A DNA stretch of 64,000 nt, from the NCBI GenBank assembly GCA_964252035.1, contig OZ176200.1; one strand, written 5' to 3'. The notes beneath the pieces were generated by a model that saw only the letters and a program-made list of their open reading frames with translations, searched no databases and was not told the DNA's origin. How positions within the stretch are numbered: position 1 is the first letter of the stretch; each line of letters opens with the position of its first letter. A program made the position numbers and the translations under genes. This document shows positions 17,165 to 56,782 of the stretch, in pieces. This DNA is from Podarcis erhardii. Its lineage: Eukaryota.

Positions 17165-18134
17165 GTAAGTGACCACTTATATGTGTTATACTCAGAACTG
17201 TTGTTGAAATGCCAGAATTTGGACTTTAGGGAGTTTCTCTTCTGGCCATCACATACTTCATGTAGTGGCTCGAAGATTCTGCTGGGCTGTGTGAATGATG
17301 TTCAGTTTTCATCCTCATTATCATCCTCCTCATATTAAATTTCTATACCTCCCTTCATCCAAGGATCACAGGGCAGTTTATAGTATGAAAACACAAAAAT
17401 ACATAACAAAGAAAACAATATCCCCCCACCCCAGTTTAAAAGGCCCTAGATTGTTTAGTCAAAGTACTGGCAGAAGAGAAATGTTCTAGATTAGTTTTGA
17501 GATGAATAACCCAAGTTGGCTTTATCAAATAGAAATTAACTTACTGTACTTAAAATAAGCAGAGTAAGAGCTTGTCCGCATATCTGCTTGTCATGTGGGT
17601 CCGATCTTCCACTTGTCCTGTGCTTTCTAGGCACAGATCTGAGTGGTTTTTCCATTTCTCCCACTGCTTTCCCCAGGAAAAACTGCTGTTTACCTCATAA
17701 TTGGAACAAATGTCAATCTGCAGAAAAACTGATTGATTCTTGTTCTGATTCAATGGCAAGCAGCGGGTCTTCCTGTTGGAAAGCAGAAGGACAAGTGGAA
17801 GTGTGGGAGAGCCCTAAAAGTCAAGTTGGCTTTAAAAAAACCAGCATTTATTAGTGATCTGCTGTGGATATCATGCTAAACAGTAATTTAGCATTATATG
17901 AATGAGCCGCAGCTTGCCTCAGGCGTAGATTCAAAGAGGTGTTTGGAAGCATTCACTGTTTCTGCTTAACTACAGCTTGTTGTGTTGTTTGAACCAACAA
18001 ACTGCGATCAAACTGTGGTTAATATTCACAAGCTAAGTTCAAAATTGCTTTGAATCATAGAATCATAGAATCATAGAGTTGGAAGAGACCACAAGGGCCA
18101 TCGAGTCCAACCCCCTGCCAAGCAGGAAACACCA

Positions 18135-21057
18135 TCAGAGCACTCCTGACATATGGTTGTCAAGCCTCTGCTTAAAGACCTCCAAAGAAGGAGACTCCAC
18201 CACACTCCTTGGCAGCAAATTCCACTGTCGAACAGCTCTTACTGTCAGGAAGTTCTTCCTAATGTTTAGGTGGAATCTTCTTTCTTGTAGTTTGGAACCA
18301 TTGCTCCATGTCCGCTTCTCTGGAGCAGCAGAAAACAACCTTTCTCCCTCCTCTATGTGACATCCTTTTATATATTTGAACATGGCTATCATATCACCCC
18401 TTAACCTCCTCTTCTCCAGGCTAAACATGCCCAGCTCCCTTAGCCGTTCCTCATAAGGCATCGTTTCCAGGCCTTTGACCATTTTGGTTGCCCTCCTCTG
18501 GACACGTTCCAGTTTGTCAGTGTCCTTCTTGAACTGTGGTGCCCAGAACTGGACACAGTACTCCAGGTGAGGTCTGACCAGAGCAGAATACAGTGGCACT
18601 ATTACTTCCCTTGATCTAGATGCTATACTCCTATTGATGCAGCCCAGAATTGCATTGGCTTTTTTAGCTGCCATGTCACACTGTTGGCTCATGTCAAGTT
18701 TGTGGTCAACCAAGACTCCTAGATCCTTTTCACATGTACTGCTCTCAAGCCAGGTGTCACCCATCTTGTATTTGTGCCTCTCATTTTTTTTTGCCCAAGT
18801 GCAATACTTTACATTTCTCCCTGTCAAAATTCATCTTGTTTGTTTTGGCCCAGTTCTCTAATCTGTCAAGGTTGTTTTGAAGTGTGATCCTGTCCTCTGG
18901 GGTGTTAGCCACCCCTCCCAGTTTGGTGTCATCTGCAAATTTGATCAGGATACCCTTGAGTCCATCATCCAAGTCGTTGATAAAGATGTTGAATAAGACC
19001 GGGCCCAAGACAGAACCCTATGGCACCCCACTAGTCACTCTTCTCCAGGATGAAGAGGAACCATTGATGAGCACCCTTTGGGTTCGGTCAGTCAGCCAGT
19101 TACAAATCCACTGAGTGGTAGCATAGTCAAGACCACATTTTACCAGCTTCTTTACAAGAATATCATGGGGCACCTTGTCAAATGCCTTGCTGAAATCAAG
19201 GTAGGCTACATCCACTACGTTCCCTTCATCTACCAGGGTTGTAATTCTGTCAAAAAACGAGATCAAGTTAGTCTGACATGACTTATTTTTCAGAAATCCA
19301 TGCTGACTATTGGTGATCACAGCATTCCTTTCTAGGTGCTCACAGACTGTTTGCTTAATGATCTGCTCCAGAATCTTCCCTGGTATTGATGTCAGACTGA
19401 CTGGGCGGTAATTATTTGGGTCCTCTCTTTTCCCCTTTTTGAAAACAGGGACAACATTTGCCCTCCTCCAGTCTGCCAGGACTTCGCCTGTTCTCCAGGA
19501 ATTCTCAAAGATGACTGCCAGTGGTTCTGAGATCACATCTGCCAGTTCTTTTAATACTCTTGGATGCAGTTCATCTGGCCCTGGAGACTTGAATACATCT
19601 AGACTAGCCAAGTATTCTTGTACTATCTCCTTAGTTATTCTGGGCTGTGTTTCCTCTGCTGAATCATTTGCTCCAAATTCTTCAGGTCGGGCATTGTTTT
19701 CTTTATCGGAGAAGACTGAGGCAAAGAAGGCATTGAGGAGTTCAGCCCTTTCTGTGTCCCCTGTTTGCATTTCACCATCTTCTCCTCTGAGTGACCCCAC
19801 TGTTTCTTTGTTCTTCCTTTTGCTACGAACATACCCATAAAAGCCTTTTTTGTTGCTTTTAACCTCTTTAGCAAGCCTGAGTTCATTCTGTGCTTTAGCT
19901 TTTCTGACTTTGTGTCTACACGTGCTGGCTATTTGTTTGAATTCCTCTTTGGTGGTTTCCTCCCTTTTCCATTTTTTGTACACATCCTTTTTAAATCTTA
20001 ACTCAGTTAAAAGTTCTTTAGATAGCCACCCTGGCTTCTTTAGGCACCTTCCATGTTTCCGTCTCATTGGTATTGCCTGAAGTTGTGCTTTTACTATCTC
20101 CCTCTTAACAAACTCCCAGCCATCATGAACTCCCTTTCCTTTTAGTATTACTGTCCATGGGATCTCACCCAGCACTTCCCTAAGTTTTATGAAGTCGGCT
20201 TTCTTAAAGTCAAGAAATTGAGTCCTAGTATGCTTGGCTGCTCGTTTCCGCTGTATAGTAAACTTCAGAAGAGCATAATCACTCGCGCCTAATGATCCTT
20301 CCACTTCTACCCCACTAACCAGGTCATCAACATTGGTTAGGACCAGATCTAAAATGGCTGTTCCTCTTGTTGCTTCTCCCACTTTCTGGACAATGAAGTT
20401 GTCTGCAAGGCCAGTGAGGAATCTGTCTGACCTTATGCTCTTGGCTGAGTTTGACATCCAACAAATATCCGGGTAATTGAAGTCCCCCATTACTACTATC
20501 TCCCTTCCTTTTGCATGCTTGGCCATCTGTTCCAGGAAGGCATCATCTATGTCCTCCGTTTGGCTTGGGGATCTATAGTAAACTCCCACAATGAGGTCAC
20601 TGTTATTCTTCTCTCCCTTAATTTTGACCCAAATGCTCTCACTTTGGCTTTGAGCTTCTAAATCTTGGATCTCTTCACAGGTATACACATCCCTGACATA
20701 TAACGCCACTCCTCCTCCTTTCTTGTCTGGTCTGTTTCTCTGAAATAGATTGTATCCCTCCATTATTACATTCCAATTGTGGGACTTATCCCACCAGGTT
20801 TCAGTGATGCCTATTATGTCATATTTAGTTTGCTGTACCAAGAGCTCAAGCTCATCTTGTTTATTTCCCATGCTTTGCGCATTAGTGTACAGACATTGAA
20901 GTCCATTGATCATTCTCCCGTGTCTCTTATTTAGGGATTTTTCCCTCCCACCACTAGGTCTGCGTGCTGTTTGCTCCATTTGGTCTATGACATTTGAATG
21001 ATCATCTTCATCAATTGATAGACTCCTACCTTCAGGAGCACTGTCTCCCTCCCCCAC
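18135..21057 (-). pseudogene. CR1 ORF2 (APE endonuclease + RT) with one nonsense codon and one frameshift
   Basis: LYTNAQS, GITETWW and GDFNYPD endonuclease motifs; YRPVSLTS, QHGF, YLDFSKAFD, SGVP*GSVLGP (TAG at 19020-19018 where Q is expected) and KFADD; frameshift at the T-run near 18784-18792; C-terminus in ORF 18135-18827. Confidence 0.92.
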
Positions 21058-21062
21058 ATTAG

Positions 21063-22136
21063 TCAGTTTAAAGCCCTCCTGATGAGGTTTCTGAGATTTT
21101 TGGCAAAAACATTCCTCCCAACCATTGTGAGGTGCAGCCCATCGCTTGCCAGAAGTCCATCTTCAAGAAACTGCAGTCCGTGATCTAAGAATCCAAACCG
21201 TTCTTGTTTACACCATTTGCGAAGCCAGCTGTTCACTTCCACTATTTTTCCCTCTCTCCCTGGGCCACGTCGTTCAACTGGGAGGACAGATGAGATGACA
21301 ATTTGTGCATTTAATTGCTTCAATTTCCTGCCCAGAGCCTCGTAGTCTCTTTTGATCTTCTGGAGGCTATTGCTTGCAGTGTCATTGGTTCCCACATGAA
21401 CCAAGAGGAAGGGGTATTTGTCAGTGGGTTTTATGATTCCTTGCAGTCATTCAGTTACATCTTGGATCTTAGCCCCGGGGAGACAGCACACTTCCCGAGA
21501 CATCTTGTCAGGCCCACAGATCACTGCTTCTGTTCCCCTCAGTAGGGAATCCCCTATCACCACTATACACCTCCTCTTAGGTCTGGTCGGGGTTCTTCCG
21601 TGAGCTGTCCATTCCAAGGTCGCCTGCACATTCCCTGAGGACTGACTTTGCTGCTCGTCTTCATATACCTGATCGACTGTAATGAGGGAGAGATCCTCAA
21701 ATGGAGTCTGCTCTTCGTCTTCCATGCTAGGGGAGAGGACCTCAAAGTGACTGTGTATTTCTAAACAATCAGAGCGAACCCTGGGCCTCCTACTTCTTTG
21801 AGTCACATTTCTCCATATATCTGGCTCCTGTGTTGGTGAACTAGCCTCCTTCTCAGGGGAGTCCCCTGTCTCCTCCTTGGTGGAGACGGTGTGCTCTGTT
21901 GCTTCCAAGAAGAGCTCCAGCTCTCTAATTCTTTGGAGTGTAGCTACATGTTCCTCCAGTTGCTGGACTTTGTCTTCTAAGAGGGCAATCAACATGCAAT
22001 TGCTGCAGGTAAAGCTGCCTGCAACCTTTGGCAAGATGGCAAGCATTGCGCAGGAACCGCAGGCGACTGCAGCTGTTCCCTCACCCTCCATCTTGAGAAC
22101 GTGTCGTTGGGGGTGGCTACAGCGGTCCTCCATCAT
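21063..22136 (-). pseudogene. CR1 ORF1 (zinc finger, coiled coil, SGNH/GDSL esterase), one in-frame TGA at 21449-21447
   Basis: CGSC...CSNC; leucine heptads; VIGDSLLRG, VHVGTND and DGLHL esterase blocks. DVTE*LQGIIKPTDKYPFLLVHVGTND stays in frame across the stop. Confidence 0.9.
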
Positions 22137-51042: not shown

Positions 51043-51149
51043 TGAGGGGCAGGTCAGCAATAACTCACAAGGTGCCAGTGAAATTAACTCTTTATTCAAA
51101 GAAACAAAACAGCTCAGGCCTAGTGAGCACAGCAACTCTTCCCAGTAGG
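51043..51149 (-). mobile_element. Older LTR-like remnant, 3' part with AATAAA
   Basis: Continues the interrupted sequence across the TSD; AATAAA at 51096-51091; possible CA end at 51044-51043. Boundary uncertain. Confidence 0.5.
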
Positions 51150-51772
51150 TGTGCTGGACCCGGGGGAAAGGTACCGTGAGCGTAGTCTGAGTCCACACGA
51201 GGAGGGGCGAGGTCCGAGGCGGAGAGCCGGGCGGGGAACAGGAACGCTGGAACAGGAGGCCGAGCAGGGAACAGGAACACCGGAAGGTCAGGAACAGGAG
51301 GCCGAGCAGGGAACAGGAGCACCGGATGGTCAGGAACAGGAGGCCAAGCAGGGATCAGGAACACAGGAAGGTCCAAAGCCAACAACGACGTTGCTCCCGC
51401 AACCTGGGACCGGGCTGCCTGACCTTTATCTTCTTCTAAGGCCGGGGGCGGTCCCGGCCCCCAGAAGCCCCGCCTCTCTTGGCCTTAAGGCGAGCACTCC
51501 TCCTGGGAGACACCAGTTCCCTTCGCCTCTCTGCCCTAAGCCTCTGCAGATCAGGAGAGGCCGAAGGGTTACTGGGCCCCGGGGGAGGCTCACCTGTAGC
51601 CACTGAGTCTTCCAGCACCTCTGGGGCCTGAATGATTTCACCTGGTGCCTGCTCTTGAGTTTCCTCAGCAACTATGCCTTGCCCCAGTTCAGCCGGCCCT
51701 GAAGGCGGGGACTCCTGCGCCGGCTGGGATTCCTCCGGATCACTCTCAGACTCGGAATCCCAGGCCATCACA
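51150..51772 (-). repeat. 3' LTR (623 bp)
   Basis: Copy of the 5' LTR, directly preceded by the PPT; contains the last ~111 codons of pol. Confidence 0.96.
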
Positions 51773-54700
51773 CCATCCCTCCTCCCAGGCCCCCCCCTCA
51801 CTTGAGGGCCCGGACCCGGCTTGCTGGGGTACGCTGCATAAAACTCCCGGATGCAGGCAGGTGCGTGGACGTTGACCGCTGGTTCCCAGGAACGGTCCTC
51901 TGGCCCATACCCCTTCCAGTCAATGAGATACTGCAGCCGTCCCCTGCGGTATCGGGAGTCCAGAATGCGTTCCACCTCGTACTCAGGCTCTCCCTGCACC
52001 AAGACTGGCTGCGGTCGGGGACGGTCCGGGTGGAACTCGTCGGGTGGGGCCACCGGACTCAGAAGGGACCTGTGGAATACCGGGTGAACCTTCAGGTTTG
52101 CTGGCAACCGGAGACGGAATGCCACAGGCGAGACCTGGTCCACGATAGGAAACGGGCCGGTGAACCGGGCGTCCAGCTTCCGCGAAGGTCGAGAAGGGTG
52201 GAGGTGGCGAGTGGAAAGCCATACCAAGTCACCGATGTGAAGTTCCGGCCCCACCTGGCGGTGGCGGTCGGCCTGGACCTTGTACGCCTCCTTGGCCTGG
52301 TGCAGCTGCTCCATCAACAGCTGTTGCTGGGACTGGAGCTCCTGAAGCCACTCTGTCACCGCAGGGACCGTAGATGCCGGCAGCACATCCGGAAACAACC
52401 GTGGATGAAGGCCATAACTGGCTTGGAACGGGGTCTGCTGGGTGGACGCATTCACCGCGTTGTTATAAGCGAACTCCGCCAATGCTAGGTGGTCGACCCA
52501 GTCGTCCTGCTGGTAGCTGCAGTAACACCGGAGGTACTGTTCCAGTACCGCGTTCGCCCGTTCCGTCTGGCCATCAGTCTGTGGGTGGTAAGCAGATGAG
52601 AGACAGACCTCTGTTCCGAGGGCCTGGTGCAAAGCACGCCAAAACCGGGACGTGAACTGAACGCCGCGGTCGGATACTACACGCTCAGGTAGGCCATGCA
52701 GGCGGAAGACATGCTGAAGGTACAGCTGCGCGGTTTCCTTAGCTGAGGGTATGGATGGGCAGGGGGCACAGTGCACCATCTTCGTGAAGTGGTCGGAGAA
52801 AACTAGAAGGCAGGTGCAGCCACGAGACGGGGGTAACTCCACTACAAAGTCTAGAGAAACTGTGTGCCAAGGACGTGGTGGAACCGGCAACGGCTGAAGG
52901 AGGCCGGGGGGTCGCCCGGTAGGCCCCTTGGCCCGCCTGCAGACGTCACAACCAGCGACGTAGCGAGCCACGTCAGCCTTCAAACGGGGCCACCAAAACT
53001 CACGGCTTACCAGATGGGTGGTCCGATACCGCCCAAAGTGCCCCGCCGCTGGAGCGTCATGGGTCATCCGGAGAACCTCAGCCCGCAGCGGCCCTGGTGG
53101 GATGTACAGGCGCCCGTAGTGCAGCAGAAGACCCTGATGCGAGACCAGCCCTGGATACTGAGGGCATGATCCTTCGGCCAGTTCCTGGAGTCGTTCCTGG
53201 GCCCAAGCGTCGACCCGCTGCTGTTCCCGCACCCGAGCCTGCAGTGGCTCGACCTCCTGGGTGGCCAGGAACGCAGCTGGTGGTAGGATCGTGGTGGGTG
53301 CTGCTTGCTGAACCGTGTCTGCGTTGTCTTCAGGTTTCCGGGACAGGGCATCCGCCTTCTGGTTTTGGGAGCTAGGGATGTAGCGGATCCGGAACTGGAA
53401 CCGGGAAAAGAACAACGCCCACCGGATCTGCCTTTGGTTCAGCTTACGGGTGGTCTGGAGGTATTCCAGGTTCCGGTGGTCGGTTCTCACCTCCACCGGG
53501 TGTCTTGCTCCTTCAAGATGGTGGCGCCAAACCTCAAAGGCCACCTTGATGGCCAGCAGTTCCCGCTCCCACACGGTATAGTTACGCTCCGCTGGAAGGA
53601 GCTGGCGGGAATAGAAGGCGCAGGGTAAGAGTGGCGCTTCCGGTCCGTGCTGCTGAGACAAGACGGCACCGAGAGCCGTACTGGAGGCGTCAGTCTCTAC
53701 CACAAAGGGTCGAGAAGGATCCGGATGTTGCAAGATTGGCGCTCTCTGGAAACAGGCCTTCAACCCTTGAAATGCCTCCTCCGCCTCCTTGTCCCAGGAA
53801 AACGGCGTCTTGGGGCGCAGAAGCCGGGTCAACGGGGTGGTGCGGTGAGCATAATCCGCAATGAAGGTCCGGTAATAGTTGGCGAACCCCAGGAAACGCT
53901 GTAGGTCCTTGCGGTTCCGAGGTGCCGCCCATTCTCGAACCGCTGCCACCTTCCCAGGATCCATTTGCACCCCACCTGGTGAGAGTCGATGACCCAGGAA
54001 GTCCACTGACTGCTGATGGAACTCGCACTTGCTGAGCTTTGCATACAGACGATGCTCGCGCAAGCGCTGCAGCACGGTCCGGACATGGCCCTCGTGGCAC
54101 GCCGGGTCACGGGAGTAAACCAGAATGTCATCCAAGTACACCACCACGTACTTGTCTAGCAAGTCCTGGAACACGTGGTTGATGTACCGTTGGAACACAG
54201 CAGGCGCGTTGCACAAACCAAAGGGCATAACCAGGTATTCAAACTGTCCGTACCGGGTCCCGAATGCTGTCTTCCACTCATCCCCGGCGCGGATCCGAAT
54301 CAAATTGTAGGCTCCCCGGAGGTCTAGCTTGGTGAACACCTGCGCCCCTTGCGCCCGCTCCAGTAACTCCGAAATAAGGGGCAAGGGGTACCGGTCCGGG
54401 ATGGTAATTTTGTTCAGGGCCCGGTAATCATGGCAAAGGCGGAGCTCCCCACATTTCTTTTTAACAAAGAGCACTGGCGCAGCAGTGGGCGAGGTAGAGG
54501 GTCTAATGAACCCACGCTCCAGGTTCTTGCGCAAGAAGTCCTGCAAAGCCTCGCGCTCTGGCTCTGTTAACGAGTATAAGCGACTCACCGGTAGAGGCGC
54601 TCCGGGCTGGAGGTCTATGCCGCAGTCAAAGGACCGATGCGGCGGCAGCTGGTCTGCCCCCCGTTCCTCGAACACGTCGTGATAGTCCCGGTACTCAGCG

Positions 54701-55209
54701 GGGAGCGTCGCAGCCGCCTCCTCAGTGGGCGCAGCTGCTAGCATCTCAGTCTCAGCAGGAGAATTGGGGTCTGGGAAGTGTACAGTCCGTTTGACCCAGT
54801 CAATCTGCACATTGTGAGCCTCTAGCCAGTCCATCCCAAGCACTAGGGGAAACCGGGGCATGGAGGCAATATCCAGAGTTCGCATCTCACGGTGCTGCTG
54901 GAGGCACAGGACCAGGGGCTGGGTCTCTTGAGTGACGGCGCCCGAACGCAGTGGCCGTCCGTCGATTGCCTCCACCTGTACCGGTTCTGGCTTGTTCCGA
55001 AGTGGCACCCGATGCTGGGCAGCAAAAGCAGCGTCCATATAAGAGCGGGTTGCCCCTGAATCCACCAGAGCATGGGTAAGAATCCATGGCCCTCCTGGAG
55101 GGTATAGATGTACCGGAACCATAAGGTGTTGTAATTCAATTGGTGCGGCCCCATTCTGTGCTGTTTGGGACCCCCGGTAGCTAGGGCCATCAGCTACTGG
55201 GGTTGGCGG
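51436..55209 (-). CDS. pol: Pol (protease-RT-RNase H-integrase-chromodomain-tail), read by -1 frameshift; predicted Gag-Pol 1551 aa
   Basis: Stop-free frame. ALVDSGA protease; [12 protein letters not shown] and YLDDIL RT; VETDAS and TDHRNL RNase H; HDAPAAGH...CDVC and D-D-E (SLDF, SDRG, TERAN) integrase; GPF motif; chromodomain EYEVERILD...[17 protein letters not shown]. Confidence 0.95.
51773..51786 (-). promoter_or_regulatory. Polypurine tract GGGAGGAGGGATGG
   Basis: Purine-rich run immediately abutting the TG of the 3' LTR. Confidence 0.85.
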
Positions 55210-55215
55210 TTTCCC
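55170..55215 (-). promoter_or_regulatory. -1 programmed ribosomal frameshift signal (G GGA AAC + stem-loop)
   Basis: Slippery heptamer 55215-55209 is in the gag frame (CAG GGA AAC). 6-nt spacer, then CCCCAGTAGCT/AGCTACCGGGG stem. Pol is in the -1 frame. Confidence 0.88.
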
Positions 55216-56090
55216 TGCGGCTGGCGTTTCTCTGGACAAGACCGAGCGAAGTGTCCACTTCCGCCACAGTAAAGACAGAGATTTCCCTCCCGACGCCGCG
55301 CCTTCTCTGCAGGGGAAAGGCGTGGCCGCACTGCCCCGAGCTGCATAGGCTCCTCCGTTAAATCAGTTGTGACCGTGGGGCTGCTGGAAAAAGCTGGTGC
55401 CGTGAACTGGAAGTGTCGGCGACCCCGGGCCTGACGACGATCCTCCAACCGATCGTCTATTTGTAGACACCGTTGAATGAGAGTGTCTAGCGTGGTGGGG
55501 CGTTCCATTGTGGCCAACTGGTCCAGTACCTCATCTGAAAGCCCCTCGAGATACTGGTCCCGCAGTGCCGAATCATTCCAGGTCAAGTCCTGTGCCAGCA
55601 GCCGAAACTCCGTGGTATATGCGGCCACCGTGGACTTGCCCTGTTTCAAACGCCGAATCGCCCGGTTGGCTTGACTCCCTTTCTGGGGATTGCCGAACGC
55701 GGCCTCCAAATGATTGCAAAACCCCGTATAGTCTGCCAGCAAGGGGGAGTCTTGCCTGAGTAGCGGCAACGCCCACTTGGCCGCCTGGTCCTTTAACAAA
55801 CTAATCAAAAAGTGCACCTTGGTGCGGTCGTCAGGAAAGTTCCGGGCTCGCCCCTGAATATACAGCTTGGCCTGGGCCAGGAACATGGGAAAGCTGGCCG
55901 GGGCTCCATCAAATTTCTCAGGCAAAGCCACTGGGTACTTGCCAGGAGCCGGGGCGTCGGCCCCAGGAGCCGGTAGGGCTTCCAAGCGTTGCTGAAGTGC
56001 TACAACCGCGTCACTGAGCTGCTGCACGGTGTGAGTCAAGGTCTGGTTCCTCTGGGCCAAATCCACCAGTGCAGCCGCCTGGTCAGCCAT
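55194..56090 (-). CDS. gag: Gag (298 aa), sushi/PEG10-like capsid with CCHC zinc knuckle
   Basis: gccATGG strong Kozak; N-terminal heptad-like segment; LPEKFDG motif; QxxSxVAAYxxEFRxL / DQYLEGL capsid block; [14 protein letters not shown] (CX2CX4HX4C). Confidence 0.95.
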
Positions 56091-56142
56091 GGCCTCTGGC
56101 TCTTCCCGAACGCACCCCTACGAAGGGGGAGTGCGGGTGTCG

Positions 56143-56152
56143 GCGGGAGCAA
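56143..56152 (-). promoter_or_regulatory. Primer-binding-site position: non-tRNA, putative self-priming sequence TTGCTCCCGC
   Basis: Starts 2 nt inside the 5' LTR boundary; no TGG start; perfectly complementary to GCGGGAGCAA at 56405-56396 in the LTR. Confidence 0.75.
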
Positions 56153-56154
56153 AC

Positions 56155-56777
56155 TGTGCTGGACCCGGGGGAAAGGTACCGTGAGCGTAGTCTGAGTCCA
56201 CACGAGGAGGGGCGAGGTCCGAGGCGGAGAGCCGGGCGGGGAACAGGAACGCTGGAACAGGAGGCCGAGCAGGGAACAGGAACACCGGAAGGTCAGGAAC
56301 AGGAGGCCGAGCAGGGAACAGGAGCACCGGATGGTCAGGAACAGGAGGCCAAGCAGGGATCAGGAACACAGGAAGGTCCAAAGCCAACAACGACGTTGCT
56401 CCCGCAACCTGGGACCGGGCTGCCTGACCTTTATCTTCTTCTAAGGCCGGGGGCGGTCCCGGCCCCCAGAAGCCCCGCCTCTCTTGGCCTTAAGGCGAGC
56501 ACTCCTCCTGGGAGACACCAGTTCCCTTCGCCTCTCTGCCCTAAGCCTCTGCAGATCAGGAGAGGCCGAAGGGTTACTGGGCCCCGGGGGAGGCTCACCT
56601 GTAGCCACTGAGTCTTCCAGCACCTCTGGGGCCTGAATGATTTCACCTGGTGCCTGCTCTTGAGTTTCCTCAGCAACTATGCCTTGCCCCAGTTCAGCCG
56701 GCCCTGAAGGCGGGGACTCCTGCGCCGGCTGGGATTCCTCCGGATCACTCTCAGACTCGGAATCCCAGGCCATCACA
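56155..56777 (-). repeat. 5' LTR (623 bp)
   Basis: Begins TGTGATGG and ends AGCACA on the minus strand. No mismatch to the 3' LTR seen by eye; ORF-track translations are identical at offset 5005. Confidence 0.96.
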
Positions 56778-56782
56778 GTAGG

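What the first reader, a model, noticed from the sequence alone, without database searches (positions are those of the whole stretch)
56143..56435. tRNA-independent self-priming signature with an independently predicted TSS
Seen: the PBS position reads gtTTGCTCCCGC, with no TGG to match a tRNA CCA end. Its perfect 10-nt complement GCGGGAGCAA is in the LTR at 56405-56396, and a TATA-like GATAAA (56435-56430) begins exactly 30 nt upstream of that G. Established: S. pombe Tf1 primes reverse transcription with the first 11 nt of its own mRNA, released by RNase H; this has been proposed for the Tf1/sushi group. Inference: TSS at 56405 and self-priming in a tetrapod element. As far as I recall this is untested experimentally in vertebrates.
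Basis: partly seen in the sequence, partly recalled or inferred. Interest (0 to 1): 0.75.

Follow-up and report, generated by a model that had tools for sequence, protein, structure and literature searches.

The report
Self-priming lizard LTR retrotransposon, intact copy
An intact, very recently inserted Ty3/gypsy chromovirus in what looks like a lacertid lizard genome carries the sequence signature of Tf1-type self-primed reverse transcription, a mechanism already predicted from sequence for vertebrate Tf1/sushi elements, so it is a clean new example and not a new phenomenon.

Summary
On the minus strand lies a 5,628-bp LTR retrotransposon (51150-56777). Its two 623-bp LTRs are identical, it has a 5-bp target duplication (CCTAC), and gag and pol are open. 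Two bases after the 5' LTR, TTGCTCCCGC (56152-56143) is the perfect complement of GCGGGAGCAA (56405-56396) in the LTR. The only TATA-like hexamer in the LTR, GATAAA, starts exactly 30 nt upstream of that G.

On its own the match is only moderately unlikely (P about 0.005). Relatives settle it. Eight of ten related families show the same layout with a different 10-12-nt sequence each: lizard, gecko, snake, frog, carp and two fungus-like contigs. A TATA-like motif lies 29-33 nt upstream in 7 of 8, and a pyrimidine/purine step marks the first paired base in 8 of 8.

Self-priming with a start site at about 56405 is therefore well supported by sequence, but untested experimentally. It is not new: the literature attributes self-priming to Tf1/sushi elements "from yeast and vertebrates" (Butler et al. 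2001). The two flanking "pretzel" duplexes of Tf1 could not be shown. No host tRNA set was available to test the tRNA alternative directly.

The parts
51150..56777 (-). Complete LTR retrotransposon, 5,628 bp
   Evidence: Identical 623-bp LTRs flank gag and pol. Pfam domains are in Ty3/gypsy order.
56778..56782 (-). Target-site duplication CCTAC, 5' side
51145..51149 (-). Target-site duplication CCTAC, 3' side
56155..56777 (-). 5' LTR (TGTGATGG...CCAGCACA). Inferred split: U3 56777-56406, R+U5 56405-56155
   Evidence: Exact 623-nt repeat. The U3/R border is inferred from the primer site.
51150..51772 (-). 3' LTR, 100% identical to the 5' LTR
56430..56435 (-). GATAAA, TATA-like motif 30 nt upstream of the predicted start; the only such hexamer in the LTR
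   Evidence: Conserved at -31 in the Podarcis lilfordi copy.
56396..56405 (-). Predicted self-primer GCGGGAGCAA, taken as the first 10 nt of the transcript. Predicted start site is G at 56405, with T at -1
   Evidence: Perfect complement of the PBS. The position is supported by the TATA spacing and the Y/R step in relatives.
56153..56154 (-). 2-nt spacer GT between the LTR end (CA) and the PBS
   Evidence: Relatives have 1-2-nt spacers.
56143..56152 (-). Primer-binding site TTGCTCCCGC; no TGG
51391..51400 (-). Copy of the primer sequence in the 3' LTR, at the predicted start of the 3' R
55194..56090 (-). gag, 298 aa: DUF4939 (RTL/LDOC), Retrotrans_gag, Ty3_capsid, CCHC knuckle
55209..55215 (-). 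Slippery heptamer G_GGA_AAC in the gag phase, inside the gag/pol overlap. pol is in the -1 frame
   Evidence: Same heptamer as PEG10. A hairpin lies 6 nt downstream but is not significant.
51436..55239 (-). pol ORF, 1,267 codons: protease, RT, RNase H, integrase, SH3_Tf2-1, chromodomain. It reads through the polypurine tract and 336 nt of the 3' LTR
51773..51799 (-). Polypurine-rich tract GAGGGGGGGGCCTGGGAGGAGGGATGG abutting the 3' LTR; the likely plus-strand primer
   Evidence: Function inferred from position and composition.
56254..56378 (-). Three tandem copies of a 42-nt unit inside the predicted R/U5

Best explanation
This is a young, apparently intact Ty3/gypsy chromovirus of the vertebrate sushi-like lineage. 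It most likely starts reverse transcription the way Tf1 of fission yeast does.

Proposed mechanism, step by step:
1. RNA polymerase II starts at G 56405, 30 nt downstream of GATAAA.
2. The first 10 nt of the transcript (GCGGGAGCAA) fold back and pair with TTGCTCCCGC, which lies 2 nt past U5.
3. The element's RNase H cuts after about nt 10.
4. The freed 3'-OH is extended through U5 and R, giving a minus-strand strong-stop DNA of about 243 nt (56153 to 56395).
5. This DNA then jumps to the 3' R.

What is shown: the element's structure, the complementarity, its recurrence with different sequences in relatives, and the promoter-like context.

What is inferred: the start site, the cleavage and the priming. 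Perfect pairing in every family is what this mechanism predicts if the primer is copied during plus-strand synthesis and so resets the PBS each cycle. That last point is inference from the standard retroviral scheme.
For: Structure.

Complement in this element: P = 0.004-0.006 against shuffles.

The same layout (LTR...CA, 1-2-nt spacer, 10-12-nt PBS complementary to one LTR site) with unrelated sequences in:
- Gekko japonicus, GTGCTGGCAA
- a Logan contig in the squamate clade, GAGGCAAACAA
- Ahaetulla prasina, GTCTTGGACAAA
- Xenopus tropicalis, GCTCGGACATT
- Cirrhinus mrigala, GCGAAGTTTT
- two fungus-like contigs, ACTCTTGTCAA and ATTCCGGTTCAA

Per-family shuffle P values are 0.0002-0.008. Fisher's combined P for six families is 6e-13.

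Window versus Gekko share the following CGTCGTT but differ at four primer positions, each matched by a change in the PBS.

A TATA-like motif lies at -29 to -33 in 7 of 8 families (P 2e-11), and Y/R at -1/+1 in 8 of 8 (P 6e-6).

A 90%-identical Podarcis lilfordi copy, whose LTR has diverged by 13%, keeps the primer, PBS and GATAAA intact.

Two relatives without the signature show that the search does not always find a match. One of them (Ranitomeya) falls in the outgroup clade and has a TGG-type site.

The literature describes exactly this mechanism for Tf1 and predicts it for Tf1/sushi elements, including vertebrate ones.
Against: There are no transcript or cDNA data, so the start site and the priming are unobserved.

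The minimum-energy fold of 56405-56120 is no more stable than shuffles (z = +1.6) and pairs only 5 of the 10 primer bases with the PBS.

The two flanking duplexes that Tf1 needs (the 'pretzel') were not detectable above shuffles (P 0.27 and 0.82). The two candidates I saw by eye are broken by uncompensated changes in the P. lilfordi copy.

GATAAA is a weak TATA variant, and the carp family has no TATA at all.

For three families (L002, L005, L009) the LTR end was set from the match itself. Only the window, Gekko and Xenopus among the six combined are fully independent tests. By my own hand calculation from the values, Fisher's combined P for those three is about 1e-6.

No poly(A) signal is visible in R-U5, so R cannot be delimited.

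The host tRNA set could not be examined.
Confidence: 0.82

Rival explanations
1. The complementarity is real and selected but serves another purpose, such as a long-range 5'-leader helix for packaging, dimerisation or translational control. Under this reading priming uses some other primer.
For: Pairing alone does not show cleavage or extension. No priming data exist, and the Tf1-style flanking duplexes were not found.
Against: The 3' arm always sits exactly where a PBS must sit, 1-2 nt after the LTR's CA. The 5' arm always sits where a start site is expected, with TATA at about -30 and a Y/R step. No other PBS candidate (TGG...) is present. A purely structural helix would not need to begin at the first transcribed base.
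Confidence: 0.08
2. Priming uses a host tRNA fragment (internal or half-tRNA, as in copia-like elements) or another small host RNA. Under this reading the LTR match is incidental.
For: Half-tRNA priming exists in other LTR elements. I had no host tRNA set to rule out a match: ARAGORN found no tRNA genes in the window or in three fetched loci.
Against: There is no TGG. The eight families have eight different PBS sequences, each matched by its own LTR. A tRNA model does not explain this.
Confidence: 0.05
3. The 10-nt complement is a chance match.
For: For this element alone P is only about 0.005. A first-stage reader scanning many features could meet such a match by chance.
Against: The match recurs in 8 of 10 families with different sequences, with promoter context at the same offset. 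It is conserved in a diverged P. lilfordi copy.
Confidence: 0.02

Closest known systems
Tf1 / Tf2 of Schizosaccharomyces pombe (self-primed Ty3/gypsy chromoviruses)
   Same: The PBS is complementary to the first bases of the element's own transcript and not to a tRNA. The PBS lies just past an LTR that ends in CA. A TATA box lies upstream of the primer start. The integrase carries a chromodomain.
   Different: Here gag and pol are separated by a -1 frameshift, whereas Tf1 has a single ORF (text). The three-duplex 'pretzel' required in Tf1 could not be demonstrated. The host is a vertebrate. Nothing here has been tested at the bench.
Vertebrate Tf1/sushi group: sushi-ichi of pufferfish, Amn elements; 'V-clade' of the Fungi/Vertebrates chromovirus cluster (Butler et al. 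2001; Llorens et al. 2009)
   Same: It is a vertebrate chromovirus whose gag is related to the sushi-derived RTL/LDOC/PEG10 family. Self-priming is predicted from sequence.
   Different: This is a squamate family, closest to Podarcis (92% pol identity to P. muralis; a 90%-identical DNA copy in P. lilfordi). I had no reference sequence of sushi-ichi or the Amn elements, so its placement beside them is indirect.
PEG10 (mammalian gene domesticated from a sushi-like element)
   Same: The gag family is the same (PF16297), and the same G_GGA_AAC -1 frameshift heptamer lies at the gag/pol junction.
   Different: PEG10 has no LTRs, PBS or integrase and does not transpose. The element here has all of these parts.

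Membership tests
Ty3/gypsy (Metaviridae) LTR retrotransposon | Two LTRs with TG..CA ends and a short target-site duplication | tested here: met
   623-bp identical LTRs, TGTG...CACA, 5-bp CCTAC duplication.
Ty3/gypsy (Metaviridae) LTR retrotransposon | Domain order gag, protease, RT, RNase H, integrase | tested here: met
   Pfam positions along pol. The best solved relative is Ty3 Gag-Pol, E = 1e-139.
Chromovirus | [quoted passage not shown] | tested here: met
   PF00385 at pol residues 1087-1134, after rve and SH3_Tf2-1.
Tf1/sushi group | The sequence just after the 5' LTR is complementary to a site inside the LTR and not to a tRNA 3' end | tested here: met
   10 of 10 perfect complement, P about 0.005 alone. 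It recurs in 8 of 10 related families.
Tf1/sushi group | [quoted passage not shown] | not testable with these tools
   Indirect support only: TATA-like motif at -30, Y/R at -1/+1, and the same in relatives. No transcript data were available.
Tf1/sushi group | Three-duplex 'pretzel': two further helices between PBS-adjacent sequence and LTR sequence downstream of the primer | tested here: inconclusive
   Duplex energies are no better than shuffles. Candidate helices are broken without compensation in the P. lilfordi copy. The published Tf1 structure itself was not available to me as a template.
Tf1/sushi group | RT/integrase phylogeny groups it with Tf1 and sushi-ichi | not tested
   No reference sequences of Tf1 or sushi-ichi came from any tool. 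Indirect support: it nests in a cluster mixing vertebrate and fungal chromoviruses (FastTree), and gag matches the sushi-derived RTL/LDOC family.
Tf1/sushi group | RNase H cleavage releases the primer, which is then extended | not testable with these tools
   This is a biochemical step.
tRNA-primed LTR elements | PBS begins TGG and complements the 3' end of a tRNA | tested here: not met
   The post-LTR sequence is GTTTGCTCCCGCCGAC, with no TGG. Internal tRNA fragments could not be checked because no host tRNA set was available.

The most novel reading that the evidence does not exclude
This squamate family may use a pared-down version of self-priming. It has a 10-bp primer/PBS helix without the two flanking 'pretzel' helices that Tf1 requires, an LTR with no recognisable poly(A) signal, and a U3 that is almost entirely pol coding sequence ending 5 nt before the TATA-like motif. 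With identical LTRs and open reading frames, this copy could be a currently active vertebrate element on which self-priming could be tested for the first time outside fungi.
Probability: 0.2. Interest if true: 0.5.

Novelty: new member of a known kind. Interest (0 to 1): 0.3.

Why it matters
Self-primed reverse transcription has been demonstrated only in fission-yeast elements. For vertebrates it rests on sequence inspection from 2001. This window offers an intact copy with identical LTRs from a lizard. The comparative data collected here (eight families, all with promoter context at the primer start) are a cleaner statistical case for the prediction than a single element gives. A tRNA-independent PBS would also mean that host defences based on 3'-tRNA fragments could not target this lineage through its PBS; that last point is my inference. 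None of this changes the accepted picture; it makes it testable in a tetrapod.

Tried and rejected
- Minimum-energy fold of the predicted 5' leader: no more stable than shuffles (z = +1.6), and the primer helix forms only partly. The region is pyrimidine-rich and poorly self-complementary, so global folding says little.
- 'Pretzel' flanking helices: the RNAduplex-versus-shuffle test on five families was not significant. The TGGACC/GGTCCA and GTCG/CGAC candidates seen by eye were rejected because the P. lilfordi copy changes them without compensation.
- tRNA alternative: ARAGORN found no tRNA genes in the window or in three loci, so no host tRNA comparison was possible.
- Transcript-end evidence: an exact look-up of the window's gag found nothing. 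The Logan contigs of relatives are circularly permuted assemblies, so their ends say nothing about start sites.
- The Pleurodeles locus returned no DNA.
- Two key Levin-lab papers were not held.
- An IQ-TREE run did not finish. The FastTree result is used only for coarse grouping.
- Batrachochytrium (LTRs 94% identical) and Ranitomeya elements show no complement of 7 nt or more at the PBS position. I kept them as negative examples.
No fetched locus looked human.

Full report
**What is there.** The finding lies in the 5' end of an LTR retrotransposon on the minus strand, 51150-56777 (5,628 bp). The two LTRs are 623 bp and identical base for base (56777..56155 and 51772..51150). They begin TGTG and end CACA, and are flanked by a 5-bp direct duplication, CCTAC. 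The window holds no other copy.

Inside are two reading frames:
- a 298-aa gag (56090-55197), matching DUF4939/RTL-LDOC, Retrotrans_gag, Ty3_capsid and a CCHC knuckle;
- a 1,267-codon pol frame (55239-51439) with protease, RT, RNase H, integrase zinc-binding domain, integrase core, SH3_Tf2-1 and a chromodomain.

pol is in the -1 frame relative to gag. The closest solved structure is Ty3 Gag-Pol. The closest database protein is from Podarcis muralis (92% identity), and a 90%-identical DNA copy lies in Podarcis lilfordi. The window is therefore most likely from a lacertid lizard. Identical LTRs, an intact target duplication and open frames mark a very recent insertion.

**Checking the observation.**
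- The LTR ends ...CCAGCACA at 56155.
- GT follows, then TTGCTCCCGC at 56152-56143.
- The complement GCGGGAGCAA is at 56405-56396.
- GATAAA is at 56435-56430, 30 nt upstream of the G.

The helix is exactly 10 bp; the flanking bases do not pair. The LTR boundary comes from the LTR-LTR comparison, not from the match. Against dinucleotide shuffles of the LTR, a complement of 10 nt or more to sequence starting within a few bases of the LTR end has P = 0.004-0.006. GATAAA is the only TATA-like or poly(A)-like hexamer in the whole LTR. Only 1.5% of LTR positions have such a motif 26-34 nt upstream. Taken alone this is suggestive, not decisive.

**Comparative test.** I fetched DNA around pol or gag relatives and found LTR ends by self-comparison wherever both LTRs were present. 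The same layout appears in each family below: LTR ending in CA, a 1-2-nt spacer, then a 10-12-nt stretch perfectly complementary to one site in the LTR. The sequence differs every time.

| Family | Primer (LTR site) |
|---|---|
| Window | GCGGGAGCAA |
| Gekko japonicus | GTGCTGGCAA |
| Logan contig in the squamate clade (L002) | GAGGCAAACAA |
| Ahaetulla prasina (snake) | GTCTTGGACAAA |
| Xenopus tropicalis | GCTCGGACATT |
| Cirrhinus mrigala (carp) | GCGAAGTTTT |
| Contig grouping with fungal elements (L005) | ACTCTTGTCAA |
| Contig grouping with fungal elements (L009) | ATTCCGGTTCAA |

- Per-family shuffle P values are 0.0002-0.008.
- Fisher's combined P over six families is 6e-13.
- Of those six, only the window, Gekko and Xenopus had LTR ends fixed independently of the match. 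For those three the combined P is still about 1e-6 (my hand calculation from the values).
- Window and Gekko share the sequence that follows the primer (CGTCGTT) but differ at four primer positions, each matched by the complementary change in the PBS.
- The P. lilfordi copy has an LTR 13% diverged from the window's and keeps a 33-nt block around the primer, the PBS and GATAAA unchanged.
- Two relatives lack the signature. One is a Batrachochytrium element with 94%-identical LTRs. The other is a Ranitomeya element, which has a TGG-type site and falls in the outgroup clade of the tree. So the search does not find a match in every element.

**Is the LTR site the start of the transcript?** This cannot be observed here, but two independent sequence features point to it.
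- A TATA-like motif begins 29-33 nt upstream of the first paired base in 7 of 8 families. Given how rare the motif is in each LTR, P is about 2e-11.
- The -1/+1 bases are pyrimidine/purine, the usual Pol II initiator step (established knowledge), in 8 of 8 families. The product of the background frequencies is 6e-6.

The carp family is TATA-less. I therefore put the start at 56405 +/- 1 with about 70% confidence.

**Mechanism.** The best reading is Tf1-type self-priming. As summarised in papers read here, in Tf1 the first bases of the mRNA pair with the PBS. In the Tf1 model (titles of Levin 1996 and Lin and Levin 1997, cited) RNase H releases the primer, and reverse transcription starts from it. 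Transferred to this element:
- the primer is nt 1-10;
- minus-strand strong-stop DNA would run from 56153 to 56395 (243 nt);
- it would then transfer to the 3' R, whose start is at 51400.

The plus-strand primer is presumably the purine-rich run abutting the 3' LTR (51799-51773).

Three things do not fit the Tf1 template neatly.
- The global fold of the leader is not unusually stable.
- The two extra helices of the Tf1 "pretzel" were not detectable, and my candidate helices fail in the P. lilfordi copy.
- R-U5 is A-poor (8% A) and has no poly(A) hexamer, so the end of R is unknown.

**Rivals.**
- A structural helix with a role other than priming cannot be excluded without biochemistry. It does not explain why one arm sits exactly at the PBS position and the other exactly at a promoter-defined start.
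- Priming by a tRNA fragment could not be tested directly, because no tRNA genes turned up in any sequence held. There is no TGG, and eight different PBS sequences each matched by their own LTR argue against it.
- Pure chance is excluded by the recurrence across families.

**Comparison with what is known.**
- Neumann et al. [quoted passage not shown] 2001, Lin and Levin 1997 and Atwood-Moore et al. 2006.
- Guo et al. 2015 say the mechanism is implicated "from fungi to vertebrates".

Membership in the Tf1/sushi group is supported by the chromodomain, the gag family, the signature itself and the coarse tree. I had no Tf1 or sushi-ichi reference sequences, so that defining feature is untested.

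**Verdict.** This is a new member of a known kind. Interest is modest. The value lies in an intact tetrapod copy suitable for a first experimental test, and in the comparative statistics.

Noticed in passing
window 55209-55215 (minus strand), gag/pol overlap 55197-55239: An in-phase slippery heptamer G_GGA_AAC lies just before the gag stop. It is the same heptamer used for -1 frameshifting in mammalian PEG10. A hairpin starts 6 nt downstream but is no more stable than shuffles.
   Followed up: partly
window 51436-51772 (3' LTR) = 56441-56777 (5' LTR): The pol frame reads through the polypurine tract and 336 nt of U3, adding 112 residues (an acidic stretch, then a basic one). It stops at TAG only 5 nt before the GATAAA motif, so nearly all of U3 is also coding. 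The P. lilfordi copy differs there by an 18-nt in-frame indel.
   Followed up: partly
window 56155-56405: The predicted R-U5 is 8% A and pyrimidine-rich, with no AATAAA-type hexamer. The same holds for the Gekko and Xenopus relatives. Where transcripts end in the 3' LTR, and hence the length of R, is unexplained.
   Followed up: partly
window 56254-56378: Three tandem copies of a 42-nt unit (91% matches) lie inside the predicted R/U5. They are also present in the P. lilfordi copy.
   Followed up: no
L012:2687-8489 (Ranitomeya imitator): A related chromovirus in a separate amphibian clade (with Ambystoma and Dendrobates proteins). It has no LTR complement and has TGGAGGCCCAAAG 4 nt after the LTR, which looks like an ordinary tRNA-type PBS. 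The matching tRNA was not identified.
   Followed up: partly
L004:5578-6000, L005:3906-4328, L007:4992-5414: The fungus-like family carries an extra conserved 140-aa ORF with no Pfam match, between the end of pol and the predicted transcription start.
   Followed up: no
L005, L006, L007 (each 5,843 nt): These Logan contigs have the same length but are circularly permuted (pol, LTR, gag). They are collapsed assemblies through a single LTR, so their ends carry no information on transcript ends.
   Followed up: yes
window 18001-22000: This stretch has markedly negative GC skew (-0.15 to -0.17) and AT skew (-0.17 to -0.21) compared with the rest of the window. It was not examined.
   Followed up: no
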